From Stylophora pistillata (Eukaryota): DNA of 64,000 bases. The position numbers and the translations under genes are program-made. Under the pieces are notes generated by a model. It was not told the origin of the DNA. It made no database searches and was given only the letters and a program-made list of their open reading frames with translations. The stretch covers positions 14,768 to 78,767 of the forward strand of contig NW_019218102.1 in NCBI RefSeq assembly GCF_002571385.2. The letters run 5' to 3'. Positions 28,748-43,600 of this stretch are shown here, piece by piece (the stretch's first letter is position 1; the number at the start of each line of letters is the position of its first letter).

Positions 28748-30432
28748 TCAACTATTGTATGTAGGAATCAACCTTGCAATAACACGACGACACACTGGGC
28801 AGTTGTTGACCCGCTGAGCACAGTCTATGCAACAACAGATGTGGCCACAGTCTAAAATAACAACATTACGCTGTCTGTCCATGCAAATAACACAGGCCTC
28901 TTGCTGATCTAATACTTCCCCCTCACCCAAAACATTCACTTCCTCTCTCATTCTCCTAATTAAGTCCAGTTCCACTTCCCTATCACGCCGTCTCTTGAAA
29001 TAAAGAACCAGCGACACCAGGAACAGTATGCCACTTCCAAAAGCAAAGATGGCACTCAAGATTTTCCACACCTTCTTTCCTGACTGCAGCTGTCTCATGA
29101 TTGCATCTAGTGTGAGTTGTGATAGATAATAAGTTAGACCAGACTTCGGGGGTCCAATCTTGATACCATCATCTGTCAGTGTGATTTCTCCAATCCCAGT
29201 GAGAGTTGTACCAACTGGTAACATCTCTTCAATTGTCTGGAATCCTTTGGTCTTATCACCACTGGCCCACTGTACTAAGGACTCTGCCACTGAGCTACTG
29301 ACTGGTTCAAACTTGTCATGAATAACTTTGAGGGTAAGTTGTTCAGCCGACAATGGTTCCATGACTTTAACATTGTCACCATTACCAAACAGACAGAATG
29401 GAACTGAAGATGATGCTGAGCTGATAGTTCTCTCTATGTCATGCCTACAAGTGGATACAAAAAGGATCAATGTGTGTAACATAACTTGAACCCCAAATTA
29501 AGCATGCTCCCTGTATTAAGCACACATGGACAAAAATACTCTGCCTTTCTGTAGCCCTAACTTTTATCACAATATCTCGATACTTTGAGAGGAGTAACAA
29601 TAGACTTTTTATGAAGTTAAAGACTTGTGTTTAGTTTATGTTATGATAATCAAAACTAATTCAACTATAATAGAACTCGATACATCAACAAGGGTTTTTT
29701 GAAGTTGTGTTGCACCAAAATATTAAGTATGTCATAATAGTAAAATTTTACAAGTACCGGTTTTATCATAATCATCATCATCATCACCATTAATATTGTT
29801 ACCTACCACAGCCTTGTCGTTCGACTCCACTCACTCTTATGCTCTCGTGTTTTGACGCGCTGCATGACGCCAGTAACATCTGCAACACGAGAACTTCTGA
29901 TCACTTCATTCGGTTTCTGAGGCTTTGTCTCTCCTCTGATAACGCCATAAGGTATTGAGCGGGTGTCAGAGGCCAAAAGCGCATTCCTCAGTTGTGAGCC
30001 AATTTCAACCTCTACTGCATTCTAAATAAAAACCAAATCATTCAAAAGCATTGCAGGTTATGCCCTTGTGTTTCAACAAGTTTCCCTGACAGTTTGCTGG
30101 TACCCATTTGCACTCCTGAGTGGAGAGAGACACTGTCGGAGTAAAGTGTTTTGCCCAAGAACACAACAAAATTACCCACTAGCCAAGATTAAAAAAAGAC
30201 CTTTGGATATGGGGTCCAGGGTGTCAGCCAAATAGGATATTTATTCTCATGATCTACATTGAAGCACGTCGAAAAATCCCAAACGAAAGCGGTTTTAGTT
30301 ATTAACAGTAACAGAACACGCACAAACCTGCAAGCTTCGTATGGAACCTTCCCTGTTTTTGTACACTCCATAGAATATAGCTGATACAGCAGCGCTTCCT
30401 AAACCAGCGTACAAGTAGAAGTAATCTGACAT
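28748..30432 (-). CDS. MUL1: Mitochondrial E3 ubiquitin ligase MUL1/MAPL (TM-GIDE-TM-RING)
   Basis: Exons 30328-30432 (MSDYFYLYAGLGSAAVSAIFYGVY), 29807-30021, 28748-29444 (EEMLPVGTTLTGIGE; second TM; C3HC4 RING CVICMDRQRNVVILDCGHICCC..CPVCR). Confidence 0.92.
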
Positions 30433-30713: not shown

Positions 30714-31440
30714 TGGGGCATTTTTTTTTTTTTTCCCGCATATCTTTTTCTTCTCAAGTACAAGTCGAAGTAGTTCTTAGCTAATACATCCTTGGATTTT
30801 TTTTCAAATTCGACGAGTAACTTCAAAGTTAGACATGTTTGAGCGTTTGACATTTCTGAACTAACATCTGATTTTCTGATCTACCATTTGATTTTCCCTT
30901 CAGTAGTATTTTGATGAAAATTTCTAACTGCCCGGCATTTATTCTCTTTGAGACCATGGTAAGCGGTACACTCTTCATAATTTTATTATCGAACTCATAC
31001 CTCGCGTTAATTCAGTCATTTTCTTCACTGTTGCAATGTCTTTTGTGATCCGATGGAATCTTTCTCCCCTCCTCTTTTGCTTTGATATCACCAATGTAAT
31101 TAATTTCATGTTTTTCTTTCCTAATTACTCGACAAAATCATTTGTCTCTAAGTGGACATTTCAGTTTTACGACTGAAAACATGCTACCATGGTGGCTCTT
31201 TCAAATAATTTCACGGTATAAGAGCAGTCATCCTGGGCGCTAGAAGATGTTAAAATTATGTTAATCAAGAGATTACCTGGACACAAGGAATGAAAATCGT
31301 TCGCATAATATTTTTTATTACCAGAGTAACCTGAAAATAAAGAAGGGTCACATTTTTCTGGGCTATGATATTAACAAATACAACAAGAAAAGTTTTATAA
31401 TTCACTGTCGAGGTACGACTTTGCTCGGTGACGGCTCAGC

Positions 31441-32292
31441 TCAGTCAGTGTTGTAGTTTCGTTCAAGAACTGCAGCTCTTCGCGGAGTGTTCAAGGTGTC
31501 GAAAAGCTTGTAAAGTGCGTTCGCATCATTGGATCTTGTTTTCTTTTCAAGTGGAACATCGGCCAATTCTTTCAATTCCTTTACCGCGGCTTTTAAGGGT
31601 TCCTAAAACAAGTCACGAAAAAGCAAGTGAAACAATTACTTCTTGACGATCTTTCAAGCCTGCTAATTGTTCGAATACAATATGGTTAGCTTTTGACTAA
31701 AAAATCTCAGCGAAAAGGGTCGGTTAGGCCTGGATTTGAAGATTCTCCCCTCAACTAAGAATATACACAGGTTGAAATTTATCAGTTTGTAATATATAGT
31801 TTCGCCAGAGCCTTAGAGTCCAGAAATAACTGAGAGAAAAATAACTTTTTAGCAGGTCAAGCTCACGGAGATCAGAATAATCGAATCAAACACATCTAAC
31901 TCTATAGATAAACTATTTGTAACAGCACATTGTAAACAGATAGTTACCATTATCGAAACATGCGTAATATCGACGAAATGTTCAGTACAGTCAAGAATTC
32001 TGTCTGCTTGCCGAGGCCATAGTTCAACATGAACTCCTTTCTTTGCATAACAGGGTCTGGACGCAGCCCCACCCATTGACTTTTTCTAGTTATTTATGAT
32101 TTCACAGTTTTATAACGCTAATAGTAAACAACCTTGAAACAATCATACCTTGCTGTATGCTGCTGAATCAGAGACGATCGAGCGGCCACTTAAAAAATTA
32201 TGAGTCAGTTGCCCACATATAAACTGAACCTGAAGTACTACAAGAAAACAACACACTAACCAGCTAAAGGACAATTTTAGACCACAACACAT
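31441..32292 (-). CDS. Putative neuropeptide precursor B (predicted pQLTHNFLSamide)
   Basis: Exon 32149-32292: MCCGLKLSFSWLVCCFLVVLQVQFICG-QLTHNFLS-G-R-SIVSDSAAYSK|gtatga. Last exon 31441-31602: EPLKAAVKELKELADVPLEKKTRSNDANALYKLFDTLNTPRRAAVLERNYNTD*. AATAAA at about 31314-31319. Possible internal exon at about 31950-32085. Confidence 0.7.
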
Positions 32293-33170
32293 TTCTAGAT
32301 CTTCACACAACGAACTCGTAAATCTGTTTGAAAGCTTCTAAGATGCGATCCTCTTTAAATCCACACGCATACATTAGATATACAAACGTTAAACTGATAC
32401 AAACATGTCAACAATATAACACAGTAAGATACGGACGGAAGTTTTCATCGAGAAAAAGAAACATGGTGAGTTTCATTTCCCCACGTTGCCTTTAAATTGA
32501 AATAATTTTCTGTTCCTGTTTCCTTCCTCTTTCCTTTCAAATGCTGTTGCGTCTCAATAAGACATCGACAAACGAAATTGATCGAAAGAGAGTGGAACTA
32601 AATAAATCAAATGATTTAAGTATGAAATAGCGGTTATGTAACAATTAATCCGCGCGAAAGTGACAAAAGCTGCGAAAATTCTACGTCCGTAAATTTTCTC
32701 TACAAAACTAGGCACTGCATTTAAACCTGTGTAAATTCGATCGACAGTCTTAAAAATTACAGGTAGGAAAAAAAAGTGTATATTCATATCTACCATCCAG
32801 GCTTCATAATTGTTTGCTACTCACCATTTATAAAATTAATCTTTGAGAATTGACCTTAATATTTCCTTATTTGTCTAATTGTAGAACTGAATCTGGAGCA
32901 AGGTCTAGTCGTACTTCCTTAAATATTTCATCAAAAAGTTACAGAAGAGTAATATAATTTTCCAGAGAGTAGATGAGGCCCACTAGTGGACATAGACGTG
33001 ACATTTACAGTCTGCTGACTTGGGTGTTAATGTGGTAATATGGGACGAAATATTGCGTATTCATTTTATTTCATTTTATTTTATTTTTTCCACTACACAT
33101 AGTAGTAAGTTAAGAGACAAAATATCACCTGATCATAATCATCCCACACTGATATTTATGTCACATTTAA

Positions 33171-33470
33171 GGTGGGGGGGGGGTGATCAAGGCTGTTTTA
33201 ATATCGACGGAAACCAACCCATCCCCTCCCATAAACAGCCAGGCATACAGTTATAAATCTTCAAATAACTGCAGAGTTTCAAAGATTGGTAGAAGACTTA
33301 AGACATTTTTAAAGACATTTTTGTTGCATTGAGGGAGGGGGGACGAGCAAGGCTGTTACGTTTCACTATCGAAGGAAACCAACCCCCCCCCCCATCCCTT
33401 ATAACCAAACAGGCACACAATTTTAAATCATAAAATAATTGTAGAGTTTCAAAGATTGTTGGAAGATTCA
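33171..33470. repeat. Diverged direct duplication of about 135 bp
   Basis: 33171-33300 and 33331-33470 share G-run-caaggctgtt..tatcga.ggaaaccaaccc..caggca.aca.tt.taaatc..agagtttcaaagattg. Confidence 0.75.
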
Positions 33471-33687
33471 ATGGAAGTCGTGGGATAGGCTGACCAATTC
33501 TTATCTGCTTATCAGTGTTGAACTGAACTGACCCTGTTGTAAAAACCAACTGACCGTGATTTCACTGTAATTTAACATTTTATTTCTCTTTTCAATCAGT
33601 CTTTACTGCAATAACTATAATTATTAATAATTATTATCGGTTTCAAGAAAGTACTCTGTGGATTACAATCTTCCTAACTTGTGGAAT

Positions 33688-34450
33688 TTAGTTCTCATCA
33701 TCAGCATCTCTTGCGAGGTTTCTTCCATTAGAAACACTGTTGTAATAATTGTGCAGAGCTTTTCCTCGGCGGTCGACTGTTCTCGCCTCATATTCTCCAG
33801 GGGTCCTCTGATTTTTGTTCATGGAATCTGTGCCTCTCTTTTCGTCATTTCCTACAGTATTCTAAACGATGAAATTAAGGTGTTACTTTTGGCACAACAA
33901 TTCCATGCGTTGAATGTGCGATCTTTCAGGAATAGGTAATGAAACAGACAACCATAAAAAAATGCCATCTTCCTCTACTCTCTCCGAAAAAAGTAAAAAA
34001 CAGAAAAAACAAAAAAAACAAAAACAAAAACAAAACAAAACAATCGGGAAATGATATATTAGGGTCAGATTCTAGAGGAATGAGAAAATTCTGGAAAAAT
34101 ATGTCAGGAATGGACTTGAAGTTCTCCAATCCAGAATTCACCTTTTACTCCTTGGAATTTGGGTTGAAGTGAAGCGATTCCTTGCATACTTTATGTTGTT
34201 TGGAGTAGCTGGTCTGAAGGATTTGCCACAAAAATTAACATTTCATGGGCACGGAAGGAATTCATTGAACAAGAGAAAATCCAATTAGCGTCAAAGTATG
34301 TTAGTACTTAAAAGTTTGTAAACTTACCTTACGGGCGAAAGATCGCAGAATGAAACTTCGTCCCGGCGGTTTGATGGCGCTTAACTGACACAGTGCAAGT
34401 TGAAAACTAAGGCAAAAAACAACCATCAAGCAGACTAGAGACTTCTTCAT
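33688..34450 (-). CDS. Putative neuropeptide precursor A (predicted pQLSAIKPPamide)
   Basis: Exon 34328-34450: MKKSLVCLMVVFCLSFQLALC-QLSAIKPP-G-R-SFILRSFARK|gtaagt. Optional 24-nt exon 34190-34213 (TSYSKQHK). Last exon 33688-33861: NTVGNDEKRGTDSMNKNQRTPGEYEARTVDRRGKALHNYYNSVSNGRNLARDADDEN*. AATAAA at about 33579-33584. Confidence 0.72.
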
Positions 34451-34539
34451 GTTTCCTTCGTCTTACAAATGAAAATTTAGTTTAAAACCTGACCTCTGCT
34501 TTCAAGCGGTTCGAATGTTGAAACTATTTCAAGTACTCC

Positions 34540-34548
34540 TTATATATA
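34540..34548 (-). promoter_or_regulatory. Candidate TATA box of peptide precursor A
   Basis: TATATATAA on the minus strand about 90 bp upstream of the ATG. Confidence 0.5.
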
Positions 34549-34649
34549 CTGGGAAATTCTATACGATGGCATATCACCCAACATGGTTATAAGTTTGGTA
34601 GTTCAACTGAATACAATAAAATTACGGGCGCGGGGCAAGGTAAGAAAGC

Positions 34650-34725
34650 TGAGCCCCATGTGAGCAGGATTCGAACCGCTTATCTTCCGATTTCGCTATC
34701 GGATGCCCAACCAACTGAGCCAGCA
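34650..34725 (-). mobile_element. tRNA-derived SINE head (A/B boxes)
   Basis: Minus strand TGGCTCAGTTGG...GGTTCGAATCC without a closing acceptor stem. Confidence 0.6.
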
Positions 34726-37700
34726 AAAGGTGTCCGTGAGTTCGTAAGAACTGAATAGATTTGTGACCTTCCATTCACATGTCAACAGACTGACCCTTTA
34801 TTGAAGTTGAGTTTAATAGTTTTTATTAGTCGACCACGTCGAGATTTGTTCCTGCGTTTTCCGTTTCTCAGGGGTTATTGTTTAGAGTGCTATTTTAGAC
34901 ACTTCAAATTAAAATTTTACAAAGCGCTCCATGGGTCCAGAACGCGGAAACTACTTTCTGGAGGCTTTTGTTCTGATTTAATGGGATAAGGTAACAGAAA
35001 CACGGGGATATAATTAAAATAATCAAAACCGGAGATTCTCTCACAAAAGATATTAAAGAGAAAGGTGTTGAGGCAAAACAATTCTGTGTTGATCTTTCAA
35101 TCGATGATCGCCGGATGTCTCGATCGCGTTGGAAGCAGATGAAATAGAATTGTAGCGACCATGTGAGAGTTAAGAAAGTATGGCAGCTTAGGGAGCTCAG
35201 CTTAACATCCGGCGCGTTAAAAATAGGTCTGTATTTCGGACACTTCAGAATAACACTTAACTTACATATTTTAGCTGGGACAAGTTATGTGTAAAGCTGA
35301 CTAAATCTGCGATAAAAGAAGAGTTCGCAAAGAAAATAAATGTGGTGGGCTTCTATCGAAAGTCAGAGAAAATACAACGGGTGTTTACTGCTATTAGGCT
35401 ACATTTTCAACACCTAGACCTGTACCTGGTTGTTATAAGGGCATACACGACATGCTTTCCTGACCAGTATTCCAGAGACGCAACTGAGGAGGGAAACAGA
35501 AATCAAAGCTCCCTTATATGGCAAATCAATAAGATAATTTTAACAAACTACCCACAACAAAACCTTTAAAAAATAGATGAAGTTGGTAACAGAACAATTT
35601 TCAAGACTTTCAAATAAGATGTTGTACCAAGTGCTTTCGCGTGAAAATTGTGCAAGGCATTTGGCGCATTTTACCGAAGCACAAGGGCAGCCGGACTAGC
35701 TCGAGAGTTAAATAACCTTCAGTCGCACAATGATTAGAGTTCTAAGGCCGAGAACACTGGACATGAGCTTTGGGTTCAACGAAGACTTTGAGCTACTCAA
35801 CACAAAAATGACCAAAATTTTCTTTTTGATCATCGCACATGTTGCCGTATGCTCACGTGACATTCGCGTGGTCGAGTAATCGTCGTCGTTGTTGTGAGCA
35901 GCCTGAAGTCTCCTCAGTCTGTTTTCAAACCTCTCCTACCCCTTCACAGGAAACTAATCGCACATGATGTAGGTTACGCCATTTCCACAGATTGTAGCTA
36001 TTATGGGGCCGAGAAGGTATAGTGTTGATGTCGATTGGTATAATTTCATTCAATTCACGAACGATTATGTAGTTGCCACAACATTTCATAATTTGATTAA
36101 TAATTGATACATTATTTACAGGGTCAGCGGGTGAGCTGGCTTGTTTTGAATTTTCTCTCTGTTGACGAAACAGTTTCAATACGGTCTGCTCTAGAACCTA
36201 TGGCTGATTGGTTTAGTTGCGCGAAAACAAAGGAACCGAAGGCTTACAACTTGTAAGCGTGTCCAGCACTGTGCTCATTCGATAGACTGCAAAGCGTCCG
36301 ACACAAAGTTACGGCAGTGGATGAGATGTGAGTGCTTTAATCACTGTTTAAAATAAGAACTCCTCTCGAAATTGCCAAACACCTCCTTCTCTTCTTCCCC
36401 AATTGAAAACACTCCCTCACACACTCAAGCTACGTGCCACGGTTAGAACAGAACGACCTAACTTAAATAACTGTAGTTGTTACATCCTTGCTAAGCACAG
36501 TTTCACGGTGTTAGAGCTCCACAGATACAATCTCCTTCAAGATGTGATTTCTCCTCGACTACCAATCATACCACTCGGTGAAAAAGAGCTCCTTAGTCTT
36601 CGAAAAACACTGGCTTTACTCGCGAACAGTAGAAAAAACCTTTCTTTTCTTTATCGCTTAATGTTGTTGCCAGAAAACGATAAGTTTAGCTCCGGCAACA
36701 TGAAATCAATAGTAAGAACTATGATAAAAATTATAACTATTTTCTAGCCCCACAAAATGTTATTGATTGTGTTTACTGAATGATAACTTTGTATTACTTG
36801 TAGCATTAATTAGATCATTTTTCGGTTTTGAGTCAACTGGTTTTGACCCATATATCACTCTCTATCAGTTACGTGCTATTAAAAGCTTAAAAATGTCAAG
36901 AGAACTTGTTTTTAGTTCGTTTGTCATATGTTACTAGGTAATTAATTTCTGTTTTTGATATATGGTGTGTAACATTCGTAACAAATGATTAAAACTAAAA
37001 ATCAGCTCATTTTTCATTAAAATTTGTCAAAGTTAAATGCTCTAAGAAGAAAATTAATCTGTGTAATCCAGCATCTCCGATCCAGTTATTTAATTTGAAG
37101 TGACAACGCCAAATTGCTTTGGCCTAAGGGAAGTGTTTACGACAAAACGCAATCTATTTCGCTTGGCACGATTTTCTCAGCGACTGAAAGCTTTCAAAAT
37201 ATTTCACTCGTCTATCCGTAATGTGTCCGGGAAAGTCATTCGATTTTCTTTGTTATTGAGTTTTTGTGAATCAATTGAAGGCTGTAGTTGCATCACTTTT
37301 AATTTGATTCAAACAGTATTTTATTTACTCCCTGTAAAAAAGGTGATATCAAGACTCTTAATTTAAGGGGGAGCAATTATGACAAAAGACAGTTGCTTAC
37401 GTAAGTTTGATAGCTTTTTAAAACAGCACGCGAAAAAACCGTTGAGCATTTGAAAAAAAAATTATTAATACCTGTTTGCTAAAATAGAATTAACAAACTA
37501 AAATGGAACCAGGGAAAGAGATCATTTTTCCAATCAAATTAACGATTCGACTGACTTTAATTTGTTCTTTAATAATTCGACAACCCGTCCATTCTTAATT
37601 TTTTAAAAATGGGGGCGAAAGACAGTTAGAGAGAATTGTTTACACTGTTAGTGAAACCTAGAAAAAGTGGAACTGCTACAAGATAGCCTTAGACCCGTTG

Positions 37701-40633: not shown

Positions 40634-43600
40634 ATGGAAATGGAGGAATTAAAGGCAATTCGAGAGAAAAGAGAGAACTGCATGAAAGAAGTAAAAGACG
40701 CGTGGAAATCAGAAACAGGTGAAGCTACGCGTGTTATCAAAGACTTCAGTGGGTACACCACCCTACACGGGTTTCATTTTGTCCTTGACTCTGCCTCCCG
40801 AATACGAAGGATTATTTGGATCACATTGATTTCCCTCGGCATATGCGCACTCTTCTTCCAGTTTCGAGACAACTGGCGTAAATTACAGAGCTATGAAAGC
40901 GTCATTGGCAAAGATATTGATCATGCCGAGAAGCTGTTGTTCCCTGCAATTACTATTTGCAACCAGAATATGATGCGCAAAAGTAAAATTTGGGGAACAG
41001 ACGCGCAAACATTTCTAGACCAACAAGATCAAGTGAAGTTGCATATCTTTGGAAATAAACTATTGGAACAAGAGACGAGCCCTGACTTCGATCCTGGGGA
41101 GAGTGTGATGAAAAACGGTCACAACCTGTCTGAGATGATGAAAGACTGTAAATGGAAAAATCAGCCATGCGCTCCTGCTAACTTCTCCTCGTTTATTTCT
41201 TTCATGGTGAGGTTTACAAACTTTGTTATGACATACTTTACATACTTTGTTGCCACCTCCCCGTTGGGGAGCCATCTACTCTCTAAGTGAGCAGCAGTGA
41301 AGTGTCACTAACATTCGGCAATAGTACATCAACGGTTGGTAAATTTTTCGTATGTACTTAAAATAAAATGCCGACGATGACGATGATGATATACACCACT
41401 TGCAGGATAGATTAAAAATGAGGTCCATACTTATCTGTGATCTAAAACTTTGACAGTTGTTTCTCTGTTTTTCGATCCGCAAAACAACAAAGGCGAAGAG
41501 GGTAAAAAAAAAAGCAGCTTTCACAGATTCAAAACGAATTTGTTCTGGATCGGTCAGTTTTTCTTAAGACTGAGAAAATGCAAGGATTTTAAACCTCCAA
41601 CTGGTATAAATCTAATGAGATATAGATCGAAGCAGATGTTACTTAGTTTGCTCTTGTTGCCAATCGAGAAAAATGGAGTGTATCGTTGAAGAAGGGAGAG
41701 GAAATATAAGAAAACAAGATAGACTTTTTCACTTTGTATAAAAATAATTTTTCTGCCTGCAGCGTGGGGTGTGCTACACGTTTAACTCTGATCGGCGTGG
41801 TCACCAAAAGCTTTATGTGACAACATCAGGAAAAATCCAAGCCTTGTCACTTTACTTGGATGCGCAACCCGAAGAGTATTACGGACCATACAGCTACGAT
41901 GCGACAGGTTTTAAGATTATGATTCACGATCAGAAGGACTTGTATCCAAACATTGAAGACCTTGCTTTGGACATTACTCCAGGGTTTACCACAAACATAC
42001 GCGTGCGCAGAAGCAAGGTTTGTACAACCAAGTTCTTTGTGGAGAGTACTAGGCCCTCTTTATCTTTCAGACATGTCACTAGGCTAGACCATATGTTGCC
42101 CGAGTCCTGTTTCTTTCATATCGCAAGGATTAGCGATGCCCAACATGAGCAATGTACTTTAATGTATAACGATTTCATTAATTTATTTGTCATTTAAGAT
42201 GGTGAGTCTCCCTGCGCCATTTAAATCCGCCTGCAGCGAGAAGAGCTTGGCAGCTTTCAAAGTGTACTCACAGTACGCATGTCTATTAGAGTGTTACACT
42301 AACATAACCCTCGAAGTGTGTGGCTGTCGGCTGCTGTCTATGCCTTCATTTGGTAAGCAATATGCTGTTTAAGATGATACAAATACACACAGATCAAGGA
42401 GTCAATCAGATAAGAAGATAAAGTTTAAGTTAAAAATGTTAATATTCCAACAGATGAGAACAAAACGAGATATTGCTCCGCGAAGGAAATCTTTACCTGC
42501 GTGTTCCCAAAATATGGTAGGTGTAAGCTTTTGACACAACGAAACACATTTTCCCATTCGTACAAATGCATGTGTCAATCACTCTTTCACTAACTCAGAG
42601 GTAAACAATCAACATCTTTACAAAACGTATCATTATCTTTATCGCATTATTAGAGCATTATCGCCACTCTTTCCAAAGTAGTGCCACAACTCTGGTGTGA
42701 AAGTTGAAAAAAAAAATTAAAATTTAGCCAGGTTAAGATGACCTCCCATGTGGCTATCCCAATAGACCGTGTAGGGATGCTAAAATTTCTCTTACTTCTC
42801 TGTTTAGGTAAATTTAATCCAAGCAGTTGTGCCTGCCCGGCACCATGTACGGAGATACGCTATCATGTTCAGGCCTCCATGGCGTACGCTCCGTCAAATC
42901 ACTTATGGGACACAATATTTCCAATGTACAACATGTCAAGTAATGACACAGAGAAAGTTGTTGAGTTCCAGAACTACATCAGGTAAAAAACGCTAAGTCA
43001 CACCCCCACTTTTAGAAGTCCCAAAATCAAGAATGTTGAATATCACAAAACATAATTAGATACCTGTACTCCTACGATACCTGAGGGGTCCTTTTTGTCT
43101 TAGTGTTTGGGATACAGCACGAGCTTCTTCACTAAAGAGACTTTTTTCCACGACTTTATAAAGACTTCTTACGAATGAAATTGTTATCAATAGAATAAGA
43201 AAGATGGTAAAGTTTGATATCTTCCCACGAGCGTAAGAATCGAATCCCTAACTTTCGAATTCTGCGCTCCGATGCTCTATCACTGAGCTACAGAGAACTC
43301 TGCGGTAATTTATATGATCTGGACGTGAAGTCGAACAATTCAGGTGTCCAGTACTGAACGCTGTACGTTGTTCTTTTTGAGCTTTAGTACTATACGACGA
43401 ATTTATTTGACTACTCCTCTAGATTTTTTTTGTATCGTTGCATTGGTAGGCAAAGAATGGCCCAAGTGAACATTTATTACGAAAGTCTGGACACAGAAGT
43501 CACGGAGGAGAAACCTGCGTATGATTTCAATGCTTTTGGATGTGAGTACTGTTTTTGGTCAAGTTCTTACCTCTAAAATACCTCAGTTTATTTGGCGATA

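What the first reader, a model, noticed from the sequence alone, without database searches (positions are those of the whole stretch)
31441..34450. Hidden tandem pair of single-copy pyroGlu/amidated octapeptide precursor genes (pQLTHNFLSamide, pQLSAIKPPamide)
Seen: two neighbouring minus-strand spliced genes missed by the ORF track, with the same layout. Each has a Cys-containing hydrophobic signal peptide, then Q-L-x6-G-R-S, a phase-0 intron 11-12 codons later (K|gt), and a ~55-aa last exon with basic sites and a loosely shared motif (ALYKLFDTLNTPRRAAVLER vs ALHNYYNSVSNGRNLAR), followed by AATAAA. Known: N-terminal Gln cyclises to pGlu, and G-R is the standard cnidarian amidation/cleavage signal. 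One peptide directly after the signal peptide is the layout of bilaterian GnRH/AKH/corazonin precursors and of some anthozoan RPamide precursors. Inference: these are diverged paralogues of a neuropeptide family I do not recognise. The AKH resemblance (pQL.., 8 residues, amide) may be convergent, since the AKH aromatic-4/Trp-8 residues are absent.
Basis: partly seen in the sequence, partly recalled or inferred. Interest (0 to 1): 0.9.

Follow-up and report, generated by a model that had tools for sequence, protein, structure and literature searches.

The report
Two coral pGlu-amide peptide precursor genes
Two small, spliced and expressed neighbouring genes in the coral Stylophora pistillata each encode a secreted precursor that probably releases one short hormone-like peptide; related corals keep both genes, no published neuropeptide catalogue lists them, and the peptides themselves have not yet been detected.

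Summary
Poly(A) RNA-seq contigs from three studies show both predicted junctions, 34328->33861 and 32149->31602. Raw reads also show the gene A junction.

Each gene encodes a signal peptide, then Q-L-x6-G-R-S, then a phase-0 intron after Lys, then a 53-57 aa Cys-free tail.

Orthologues of both genes lie in the same position, between a DEG/ENaC channel gene and a MUL1-like E3 ligase gene, in Pocillopora meandrina and two unnamed coral assemblies. Gene B also turns up in coral metagenome contigs.
- Gene B peptide is conserved: pQL(T/A)H(S)N(F/L)xx-amide. Q, L, H, N and G-R-S are invariant in seven sequences.
- Gene A keeps pQ(L/I)S and the Gly-basic site (GRS, GKR or GRR). The rest varies in sequence and length, even among Stylophora RNA samples (C-terminal P, L or Y).

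The layout matches the known single-copy Antho-RWamide type of cnidarian preprohormone, but these are not RWamide genes. AKH/GnRH signature residues are not met in this species.

Not shown: the mature peptides, neuronal expression and any receptor. A-B paralogy rests mainly on layout (hhalign E 1e-4 on exon 1 only).

Verdict: new members of a known kind, of moderate interest.

The parts
34540..34548 (-). TATA-like box upstream of gene A
   Evidence: The sequence reads tatatataa. X24 raw reads cover 34408-34518 but not 34519-34600. That fits a transcription start about 30 nt downstream of the box.
34328..34450 (-). Gene A exon 1 coding part (41 aa)
   Evidence: Translation. The donor GT directly follows Lys41. 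The junction is confirmed by RNA.
34388..34450 (-). Gene A predicted signal peptide (21 aa, A-L-C before the cut)
   Evidence: It has a basic N-end (MKK), a hydrophobic core, and small residues at -3 and -1. This layout is kept in three orthologues and one extra copy. No SignalP run was available.
34364..34387 (-). Gene A predicted mature octapeptide QLSAIKPP (pGlu ... Pro-amide)
   Evidence: Codons 27 and 29 vary among RNA samples: K27E and P29L in X3, P29Y in X6. Pocillopora has QLSVYRPH.
34355..34363 (-). Gene A G-R-S amidation and cleavage signal
   Evidence: GRS is kept in Pocillopora and L006. It is replaced by the canonical GKR in L007 and by GRR in the extra copy on L013.
33862..34327 (-). 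Gene A intron (466 nt, phase 0, GT..AG)
   Evidence: Skipped in RNA contigs of X3, X6 and X9 and in 3 raw reads of X24.
33688..33861 (-). Gene A exon 2 coding part (57 aa plus stop), Cys-free tail with basic sites
   Evidence: Translation. It is 75-77% identical to the Pocillopora orthologue at L005:8663-8833.
33560..33687 (-). Gene A 3' UTR with AATAAA at 33579-33584
   Evidence: RNA contigs end at 33560-33565. Sequence.
32149..32292 (-). Gene B exon 1 coding part (48 aa)
   Evidence: Translation. The junction is confirmed by RNA.
32212..32292 (-). Gene B predicted signal peptide (27 aa, I-C-G before the cut)
   Evidence: Hydrophobic core, with I/T at -3 and G/A at -1 in all seven orthologous sequences. 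The VLQV.F block is invariant.
32188..32211 (-). Gene B predicted mature octapeptide QLTHNFLS (pGlu ... Ser-amide)
   Evidence: It is unchanged in three RNA runs. Q, L, H and N are invariant across seven sequences from at least five coral sources.
32179..32187 (-). Gene B G-R-S amidation and cleavage signal
   Evidence: Invariant in all seven sequences.
31603..32148 (-). Gene B intron (546 nt, phase 0, GT..AG)
   Evidence: Skipped in RNA contigs of X3, X6 and X9.
31441..31602 (-). Gene B exon 2 coding part (53 aa plus stop)
   Evidence: Translation. K(K/R)T(R/K), KLF and the terminal NY.. motifs recur in orthologues. It matches Pocillopora protein P0002 at 70% identity.
31314..31440 (-). Gene B 3' UTR; AATAAA at 31314-31319
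   Evidence: RNA contigs reach 31334-31361. Sequence. The exact poly(A) site is not resolved.

Best explanation
These are two real, tandem, two-exon genes of Stylophora pistillata. Each encodes a small prepropeptide of about 100 aa with no Cys after the leader.

**Proposed processing.**
1. The signal peptide is removed in the ER, exposing an N-terminal Gln.
2. The Gln cyclises to pyroglutamate.
3. A proprotein convertase cuts after the single Arg of G-R-S.
4. A carboxypeptidase removes the Arg.
5. Peptidylglycine alpha-amidating monooxygenase converts the Gly into a C-terminal amide.

**Predicted products.** pQLSAIKPP-amide from gene A and pQLTHNFLS-amide from gene B. Each would be released with a C-terminal associated peptide and act as a secreted signalling peptide (neuropeptide or peptide hormone).

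**Evolution.**
- Gene B belongs to a conserved family, pQL(T/A)H(S)N(F/L)xx-amide, present in several stony corals.
- Gene A is a fast-evolving neighbour that keeps only pQ(L/I)S at the start and the Gly-basic site.

**Shown here:** the genes, their splicing, expression, orthology, and conservation of the Gln and of the Gly-basic site.

**Inferred:** the signal peptidase site, pGlu formation, amidation, secretion from neurons and action on a receptor.
For: **Genes and expression.**
- Splice junctions and poly(A) RNA coverage come from three studies plus raw reads.
- The frames are open and continuous across phase-0 junctions.
- The coding frame, donor (K|GT) and acceptor are kept in Pocillopora, L006 and L007.
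- Overall dN/dS between Stylophora and Pocillopora is about 0.42.

**Conservation of the processing sites.**
- Gln directly after a (-3,-1)-compatible leader is present in all 12 gene copies seen.
- G-R-S is invariant in gene B.
- In gene A it is swapped for the canonical GKR or GRR in one species. That is the behaviour expected of a processing site.
- In the most distant gene B comparisons, the peptide start plus GRS forms the best-kept block.

**Machinery and precedent.**
- The genome holds PAM-type monooxygenase domains and many proprotein-convertase P domains.
- The same precursor layout is established for cnidarian Antho-RWamide and phenyllactyl peptides (PMC7523074). LRWamides of this layout activate GPCRs in Nematostella (PMC11087051).

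**Soft lead only.** Protein-language-model neighbours of the Pocillopora gene B protein include many small prohormones: PDH, DH31, NPF, GnRH, galanin and spexin. All score below 0.9.
Against: - No mass-spectrometric detection and no cell-type data exist. The Stylophora cell-atlas paper does not mention neuropeptides in its text.
- The single Arg of G-R-S has no second basic residue three positions before it. The monobasic sites confirmed in Nematostella follow the form Rxx-R (PMC11087051).
- Gene A's octapeptide is the least conserved part of its exon 1: 4/8 identical versus 17/21 in the leader against Pocillopora.
- Gene A's amidated end residue differs among Stylophora samples (P, L, Y) and in Pocillopora (H). 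That is unusual for a receptor-binding amide.
- Between Stylophora and Pocillopora the gene B octapeptide (5/8) is also no better kept than its flanks.
- Part of the gene B leader (VLQV.F) is oddly invariant, so the true cut site needs a test.
- No SignalP run was possible.
Confidence: 0.65

Rival explanations
1. The genes encode secreted peptides with a non-neuronal role, such as a gland-cell or epithelial product used in defence, antimicrobial action, or species- or colony-specific chemical signalling. This applies above all to gene A, whose mature region may be under diversifying selection.
For: - Four nonsynonymous changes fall in codons 27-29 of gene A among three Stylophora RNA haplotypes. 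One of them changes all three bases of a single codon. The leader has no amino-acid change in the same haplotypes.
- Length and sequence of the A peptide differ in every taxon: 8, 8, 9, 12 and 9 or 13 residues, depending on the cleavage site in the extra copy.
- Gene A is duplicated again in one coral.
- Expression is readily seen in bulk adult poly(A) libraries.
Against: - The peptides are short, linear and Cys-free, with pGlu and amide signals. That is typical of neuropeptides, not of known cnidarian toxins or of the Cys-rich coral antimicrobial peptide damicornin (own knowledge).
- Gene B's peptide is conserved across corals.
- The counts are too small for a formal test of selection.
Confidence: 0.2
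2. The genes are strongly diverged members of the Antho-RWamide single-copy preprohormone family. That family also has pQL-starting members and G-R-S/N sites in some hexacorals.
For: - The layout and size are the same.
- Some family members read QL(P/L)GIRW-GR(S/N)(F/Y), which resembles gene A's QLSAIKPP-GRSF.
- RWamide genes also occur as linked pairs. Stylophora has two on contig C53, about 16 kb apart.
Against: - No orthologue ends in RW.
- Both Stylophora RWamide genes have an uninterrupted coding exon. They lack the phase-0 intron that every A and B gene has.
- They lie on a different contig.
- There is no significant sequence similarity.
Confidence: 0.07
3. The gene B family is a cnidarian relative of the bilaterian GnRH/AKH/corazonin peptide superfamily.
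For: - It has pGlu-Leu-Thr at the start, 8-9 residues, an amide end, a single copy directly after the signal peptide, an associated peptide, and a phase-0 intron after the peptide.
- AKH and corazonin genes share a common phase-0 intron (PMC5024129).
- Orthologues in coral metagenome contigs read QLTHNFAWE and QLTHNLAWE, with Trp at position 8 as in AKHs (AKH sequences from own knowledge).
- A GnRH precursor cluster is among the language-model neighbours, at a score of 0.85.
Against: - Position 4 is His, not Phe or Tyr.
- Trp8 is absent in Stylophora, Pocillopora, L006 and L007.
- The associated peptide has no Cys, unlike AKH and corazonin precursors.
- Published receptor phylogenies find no direct orthology between cnidarian and bilaterian peptide GPCR systems (PMC11087051 abstract).
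- Short peptides converge easily, and the unrelated RWamide genes share the layout.
Confidence: 0.05

Closest known systems
Antho-RWamide (LRWamide) single-copy preprohormones of Hexacorallia (Koch & Grimmelikhuijzen 2020, PMC7523074)
   Same: - One peptide sits directly after the signal peptide.
- N-terminal Gln gives pGlu.
- Gly plus a single Arg (or KR/KK) follows as the amidation and cleavage site.
- A short 40-60 aa tail without further copies follows.
- Paralogues are often linked.
   Different: - The peptides do not end in RW-amide.
- The coding region is split by a phase-0 intron. The two Stylophora RWamide genes have none.
- The locus is different (C318 versus C53).
- No Rxx-R context precedes the cut.
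Bilaterian AKH / corazonin / GnRH preprohormones
   Same: - pGlu start, amide end and 8-12 residues.
- A single copy directly after the signal peptide, followed by an associated peptide.
- A phase-0 intron downstream of the peptide.
- The QLT start resembles several insect AKHs (own knowledge).
   Different: - No aromatic residue at position 4.
- Trp8 occurs only in some coral orthologues.
- The site is GRS rather than GKR in most.
- The tail is Cys-free.
- No receptor orthologues have been reported in cnidarians (PMC11087051).
Pocillopora 'uncharacterized protein' CAH3111221.1 / RMX38538.1 (pdam_00010240)
   Same: This is the direct orthologue of gene B. It shares the same synteny, exon structure and QL.HNF..GRSIVSDSA block.
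   Different: - It is annotated only as hypothetical.
- Its peptide is QLAHNFYA.
- Its tail ends 6 residues earlier, after the residue aligning with Stylophora's Glu47.
- No paper in the searched library mentions it.

Membership tests
Cnidarian single-copy N-terminal neuropeptide preprohormone (layout class) | Signal peptide followed at once by the single peptide copy | tested here: met
   Hydrophobic leader, small residues at -3 and -1, and Gln at +1 in all 12 gene copies. The cut site is predicted by rule, not by SignalP.
Cnidarian single-copy N-terminal neuropeptide preprohormone (layout class) | Gly followed by a basic cleavage site after the peptide | tested here: met
   GRS in 10 copies, GKR in one and GRR in one.
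Cnidarian single-copy N-terminal neuropeptide preprohormone (layout class) | Mature pGlu/amide peptide present in tissue and made by neurons | not testable with these tools
   This needs peptidomics and in situ or single-cell mapping.
Antho-RWamide family | Peptide ends in (L/I)RW-amide | tested here: not met
   The ends are PP, PH, MP, SV, LS, YA, IS, IG and WE.
Antho-RWamide family | Gene structure shared with the RWamide genes of the same genome | tested here: not met
   Both RWamide genes on C53 have one uninterrupted coding exon. A and B have a phase-0 intron.
GnRH/AKH/corazonin superfamily | pGlu start, amide end, single copy after the signal peptide, associated peptide | tested here: met
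   This rests on sequence prediction only.
GnRH/AKH/corazonin superfamily | Signature residues (aromatic at position 4, Trp at position 8 or 9) | tested here: not met
   His is at position 4 throughout. Trp8 is present only in L018-L021, and absent in Stylophora, Pocillopora, L006 and L007.
GnRH/AKH/corazonin superfamily | Shared phase-0 intron at the family's position | tested here: inconclusive
   The phase is 0 here and 0 in AKH and corazonin genes (PMC5024129). The exact position in those genes is given only in a figure that is not held.
GnRH/AKH/corazonin superfamily | Cognate GnRHR-type receptor | not tested
   Literature reports no direct orthology of cnidarian peptide GPCRs to bilaterian ones (PMC11087051).

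The most novel reading that the evidence does not exclude
The conserved gene B family, pQL(T/A)HN(F/L)..-amide with pQLTHNFAWE-amide in some corals, is a cnidarian homologue of the bilaterian GnRH/AKH/corazonin peptides. That would place the origin of this hormone superfamily before the cnidarian-bilaterian split. It would also give a molecular identity to the old reports of GnRH-like immunoreactivity in corals.
Probability: 0.05. Interest if true: 0.9.

Novelty: new member of a known kind. Interest (0 to 1): 0.5.

Why it matters
Reef-building corals have few known signalling peptides. The standard hexacoral catalogue lists five to ten precursor genes per species, and it misses these two.

- A conserved, single-copy pGlu/amide peptide gives a cheap synthetic reagent. 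It can be tested on polyp contraction, larval settlement, spawning or feeding, and used to deorphanise coral GPCRs or peptide-gated DEG/ENaC channels.
- The gene A / gene B pair offers a natural contrast: a conserved peptide beside a rapidly changing one, with the same gene architecture.
- The case shows that prokaryote-style ORF tracks and repeat-based neuropeptide finders systematically miss single-copy spliced precursors.

Tried and rejected
**Searches that found nothing useful.**
- The search for homologous proteins with gene A exon 2 found nothing. This says little, because records of the window's own genome are withheld and gene A is not called in Pocillopora.
- The first JGI metagenome scan with Stylophora gene B exon 1 alone found nothing. 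The profile scan succeeded.
- BLASTP of A against B found no alignment. Shuffle tests were not significant.
- Pfam gave no family; the only hits were far below cut-off.
- Literature searches for the peptide strings and the Pocillopora accessions returned no relevant paper.
- The Stylophora cell-atlas text has no neuropeptide mention.

**Further paralogues in the genome.** None were found. The weak profile hits on C159, C697, C44 and C529 are leaderless frames, two of them in one repeat.

**Membership of the RWamide family.** Rejected.

**The syntenic interval in other taxa.**
- L008 keeps the ASC-MUL1-FERM order but holds no A/B-like gene by pattern, tblastn or HMM.
- Nematostella (L009), Actinia (L010) and the Tara scaffolds (L011, L012) have other neighbours or too little flank.

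**ESM Atlas.** It gave only sub-threshold look-alikes.

All window searches were exon by exon by reference. The full-length database protein P0002 stood in for whole-protein searches.
- No structure or complex prediction was run.
- N stretches in the window were left untouched.
Full report
**What is in the sequence**

Two short genes lie head to tail on the minus strand between 34450 and 31441.

Gene A:
- Exon 1 CDS is 34328-34450 (41 aa). It reads a 21-residue hydrophobic, Cys-containing leader, then QLSAIKPP, G-R-S, and nine residues ending in Lys. A gtaagt donor follows.
- Exon 2 CDS is 33688-33861. It continues the frame in phase 0 for 57 residues to a stop.

Gene B has the same plan:
- Exon 1 CDS is 32149-32292 (48 aa): a 27-residue leader, QLTHNFLS, G-R-S, then ten residues ending in Lys.
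- Exon 2 CDS is 31441-31602 (53 aa plus stop).

Neither product has a Cys after the leader. AATAAA follows each gene, at 33579-33584 and 31314-31319.

**Are they real genes?**

Yes.
- Poly(A) RNA-seq contigs of three runs from three studies join 33861 to 34328 and 31602 to 32149.
- Three raw read pairs of a fourth run show the gene A junction, with the strand signature expected for a minus-strand RNA.
- Gene A transcript contigs end 15-20 nt after its AATAAA.
- X24 raw reads stop about 30 nt downstream of a TATA-like box at 34540-34548.
- Each exon 1 is single-copy in the 398 Mb assembly.
- Profile searches find no further paralogue. The weak hits are leaderless frames in a repeat.

**Which organism?**

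I checked this in part:
- The RWamide precursor on contig C53 is identical, over the whole stretch printed in Additional file 10 of PMC7523074, to the S. pistillata transcript GARY01002466.1 shown there.
- The nearest named relatives of the locus are Pocillopora meandrina and P. damicornis.

**Orthologues**

An all-against-library HMMER search with gene B exon 2 found a 93-aa 'uncharacterized protein' of Pocillopora (P0002 and P0004). Its P. meandrina locus (L005) is collinear with the window: a DEG/ENaC (ASC) channel gene, then about 6.5 kb, then an uncalled gene A orthologue, then gene B, then a MUL1-like GIDE/RING ligase.

I used the ligase as a synteny anchor and fetched further coral loci.
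- L006 and L007/L013 are unnamed ENA coral assemblies. Their ligase exons are 90% and 81% identical to Stylophora's. Both carry both genes in the same order.
- L013 carries an extra gene-A-like copy.
- A profile scan of JGI metagenomes added three gene B contigs (L018-L020). One of their products recurs in an ENA assembly (L021).
- All exon 1 copies end in Lys|GT (Glu|GT in the extra copy, which was read from the pattern scan, not the donor check). Acceptors and frames are kept.
- A fourth coral locus, L008 (ligase 74% identical), keeps the ASC-MUL1-FERM order but has no such gene by pattern, tblastn or HMM.
- The Nematostella and Actinia loci have other neighbours and no such gene.

**What is conserved**

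Predicted gene B peptides:

| Source | Peptide |
|---|---|
| Stylophora | QLTHNFLS |
| Pocillopora | QLAHNFYA |
| L006 | QLTHNFIS |
| L007 | QLAHSNFIG |
| L018, L019, L021 | QLTHNFAWE |
| L020 | QLTHNLAWE |

- Each gene B peptide is followed by G-R-S. Q, L, H, N and G-R-S are invariant in seven sequences.
- At the largest distances this block is the best-kept part of the precursor.
- The tail keeps K(K/R)T(R/K), KLF and a terminal NY.. motif.

Predicted gene A peptides:

| Source | Peptide and site |
|---|---|
| Stylophora | QLSAIKPP-GRS |
| Pocillopora | QLSVYRPH-GRS |
| L006 | QLSVSPHMP-GRS |
| L007 | QLSQPAGPVGSV-GKR |
| L013 extra copy | QISIHHGNV(GKVK)-GRR |

- Only pQ(L/I)S and the Gly-basic site persist in gene A.
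- The swap of GRS for the canonical GKR or GRR is what a true amidation and cleavage site would tolerate.
- Within Stylophora RNA samples, gene A codon 29 reads Pro, Leu or Tyr, and codon 27 reads Lys or Glu. The leader has no amino-acid change in these samples, and the gene B peptide has no change at all.
- Stylophora-Pocillopora dN/dS is about 0.42 overall. Neither octapeptide is better kept than its flanks at that distance, but the counts are small.

**Are A and B paralogues?**

- Sequence alone is weak. BLASTP finds nothing. Shuffle p is 0.03-0.14.
- hhalign gives E 1.2e-4 at 54% probability on exon 1, and nothing on exon 2.
- Each exon 1 HMM ranks the other gene's exon 1 among its next-best hits, at E 0.03-0.6. 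For the gene B profile, one unrelated Nematostella frame scores above them.
- Other shared features are adjacency, strand, the QL start, GRS, the Lys|GT phase-0 intron 9-10 residues after GRS, and a Q-x3-(C/G)|QL end of the leader.
- I regard tandem duplication as likely but not proven.

**How it most likely works**

Signal peptidase exposes Gln, which cyclises to pGlu. A convertase cuts after Arg, a carboxypeptidase trims the Arg, and PAM amidates. PAM-type and convertase P domains are present in the genome.

This precursor layout is established in hexacorals for Antho-RWamides and phenyllactyl peptides (PMC7523074). Such LRWamides activate specific GPCRs in Nematostella (PMC11087051).

Reservations:
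- The Arg lacks the Rxx-R context seen for monobasic sites in Nematostella.
- Part of the gene B leader is unusually invariant.
- Gene A's variable amide end is atypical for a neuropeptide.
- No peptide, cell type or receptor has been observed.

**Comparison with known families**

- No peptide ends in RW. The two Stylophora RWamide genes on C53 have uninterrupted coding exons. These genes are therefore not RWamide genes.
- They share every generic trait of AKH/GnRH/corazonin precursors, including a phase-0 intron after the peptide. Some orthologues even carry Trp8.
- Against that, position 4 is His, Trp8 is missing in four of the coral sources, and the tail lacks Cys. Published receptor trees find no direct cnidarian-bilaterian orthology (PMC11087051).
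- I treat the likeness as probably convergent.
- Pfam has no family for these proteins.
- The peptide strings and the Pocillopora accessions appear in no searched paper.

**Limits of this work**

- Records of the window's own genome are withheld from the protein collections. I therefore cannot say whether NCBI annotates these genes in S. pistillata. Gene A is not among the called genes of the P. meandrina assembly.
Searches were exon by exon by reference.
- The species behind L006-L008 and L018-L021 are not named by the sources, so the taxonomic breadth beyond Pocilloporidae is unknown.

**Verdict**

These are new members of a known kind, of moderate interest.

Noticed in passing
window 40634-41290 (+): An exon of a DEG/ENaC (Pfam ASC) channel gene lies about 6 kb upstream of gene A, in divergent orientation. 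The adjacency is kept in Pocillopora (L005). ASC-MUL1 synteny is also kept in L008, which lacks the peptide genes. Members of this channel family are gated by amidated neuropeptides in Hydra and molluscs (own knowledge). A ligand-channel link here is only a lead.
   Followed up: partly
window 28748-29482 (-): This is the last exon of a MUL1-like mitochondrial E3 ligase (GIDE plus RING), directly downstream of gene B. It served as the synteny anchor.
   Followed up: yes
window 34650-34740 (-): A tRNA-like stretch (GGCTCAGTTGG ... GGTTCGAATCC) sits upstream of gene A. ARAGORN does not call it. It is probably a tRNA-derived SINE. It may explain why some RNA contigs run on upstream of the TATA box.
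   Followed up: partly
window 33195-33471: Two tandem copies of a unit of about 170 bp, 80-84% alike, each with a poly-G/C tract, lie in the spacer between genes A and B. The Pocillopora spacer matches both copies.
   Followed up: partly
window 55570-56319 (-): A reverse-transcriptase (RVT_1) open frame, that is a retroelement fragment.
   Followed up: no
G000:C53:723895 (-) and G000:C53:739631 (+); L004, L022: The two Stylophora Antho-RWamide-type genes, pQGLRW-amide and (E)QGLPGIRW-amide, lie about 16 kb apart. Each has an uninterrupted coding exon. For S. pistillata, the supplement of PMC7523074 lists only the first.
   Followed up: partly
window 31482 (gene B codon 41 of exon 2); window 33724-33729 (gene A exon 2 G-R): The basic site before the C-terminal tail toggles between R-R and G-R. 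In gene B it is RR in the reference and GR in run X6. In gene A it is GR in Stylophora and RR in Pocillopora. A second, sometimes amidated, peptide may be released from the tail.
   Followed up: partly
L013:3001-3140: One unnamed coral carries a third gene of the cluster, an extra gene-A-like copy. Its leader is 90% identical to that of its neighbour (19 of 21 residues), but its peptide is quite different (QISIHHGNV...).
   Followed up: partly
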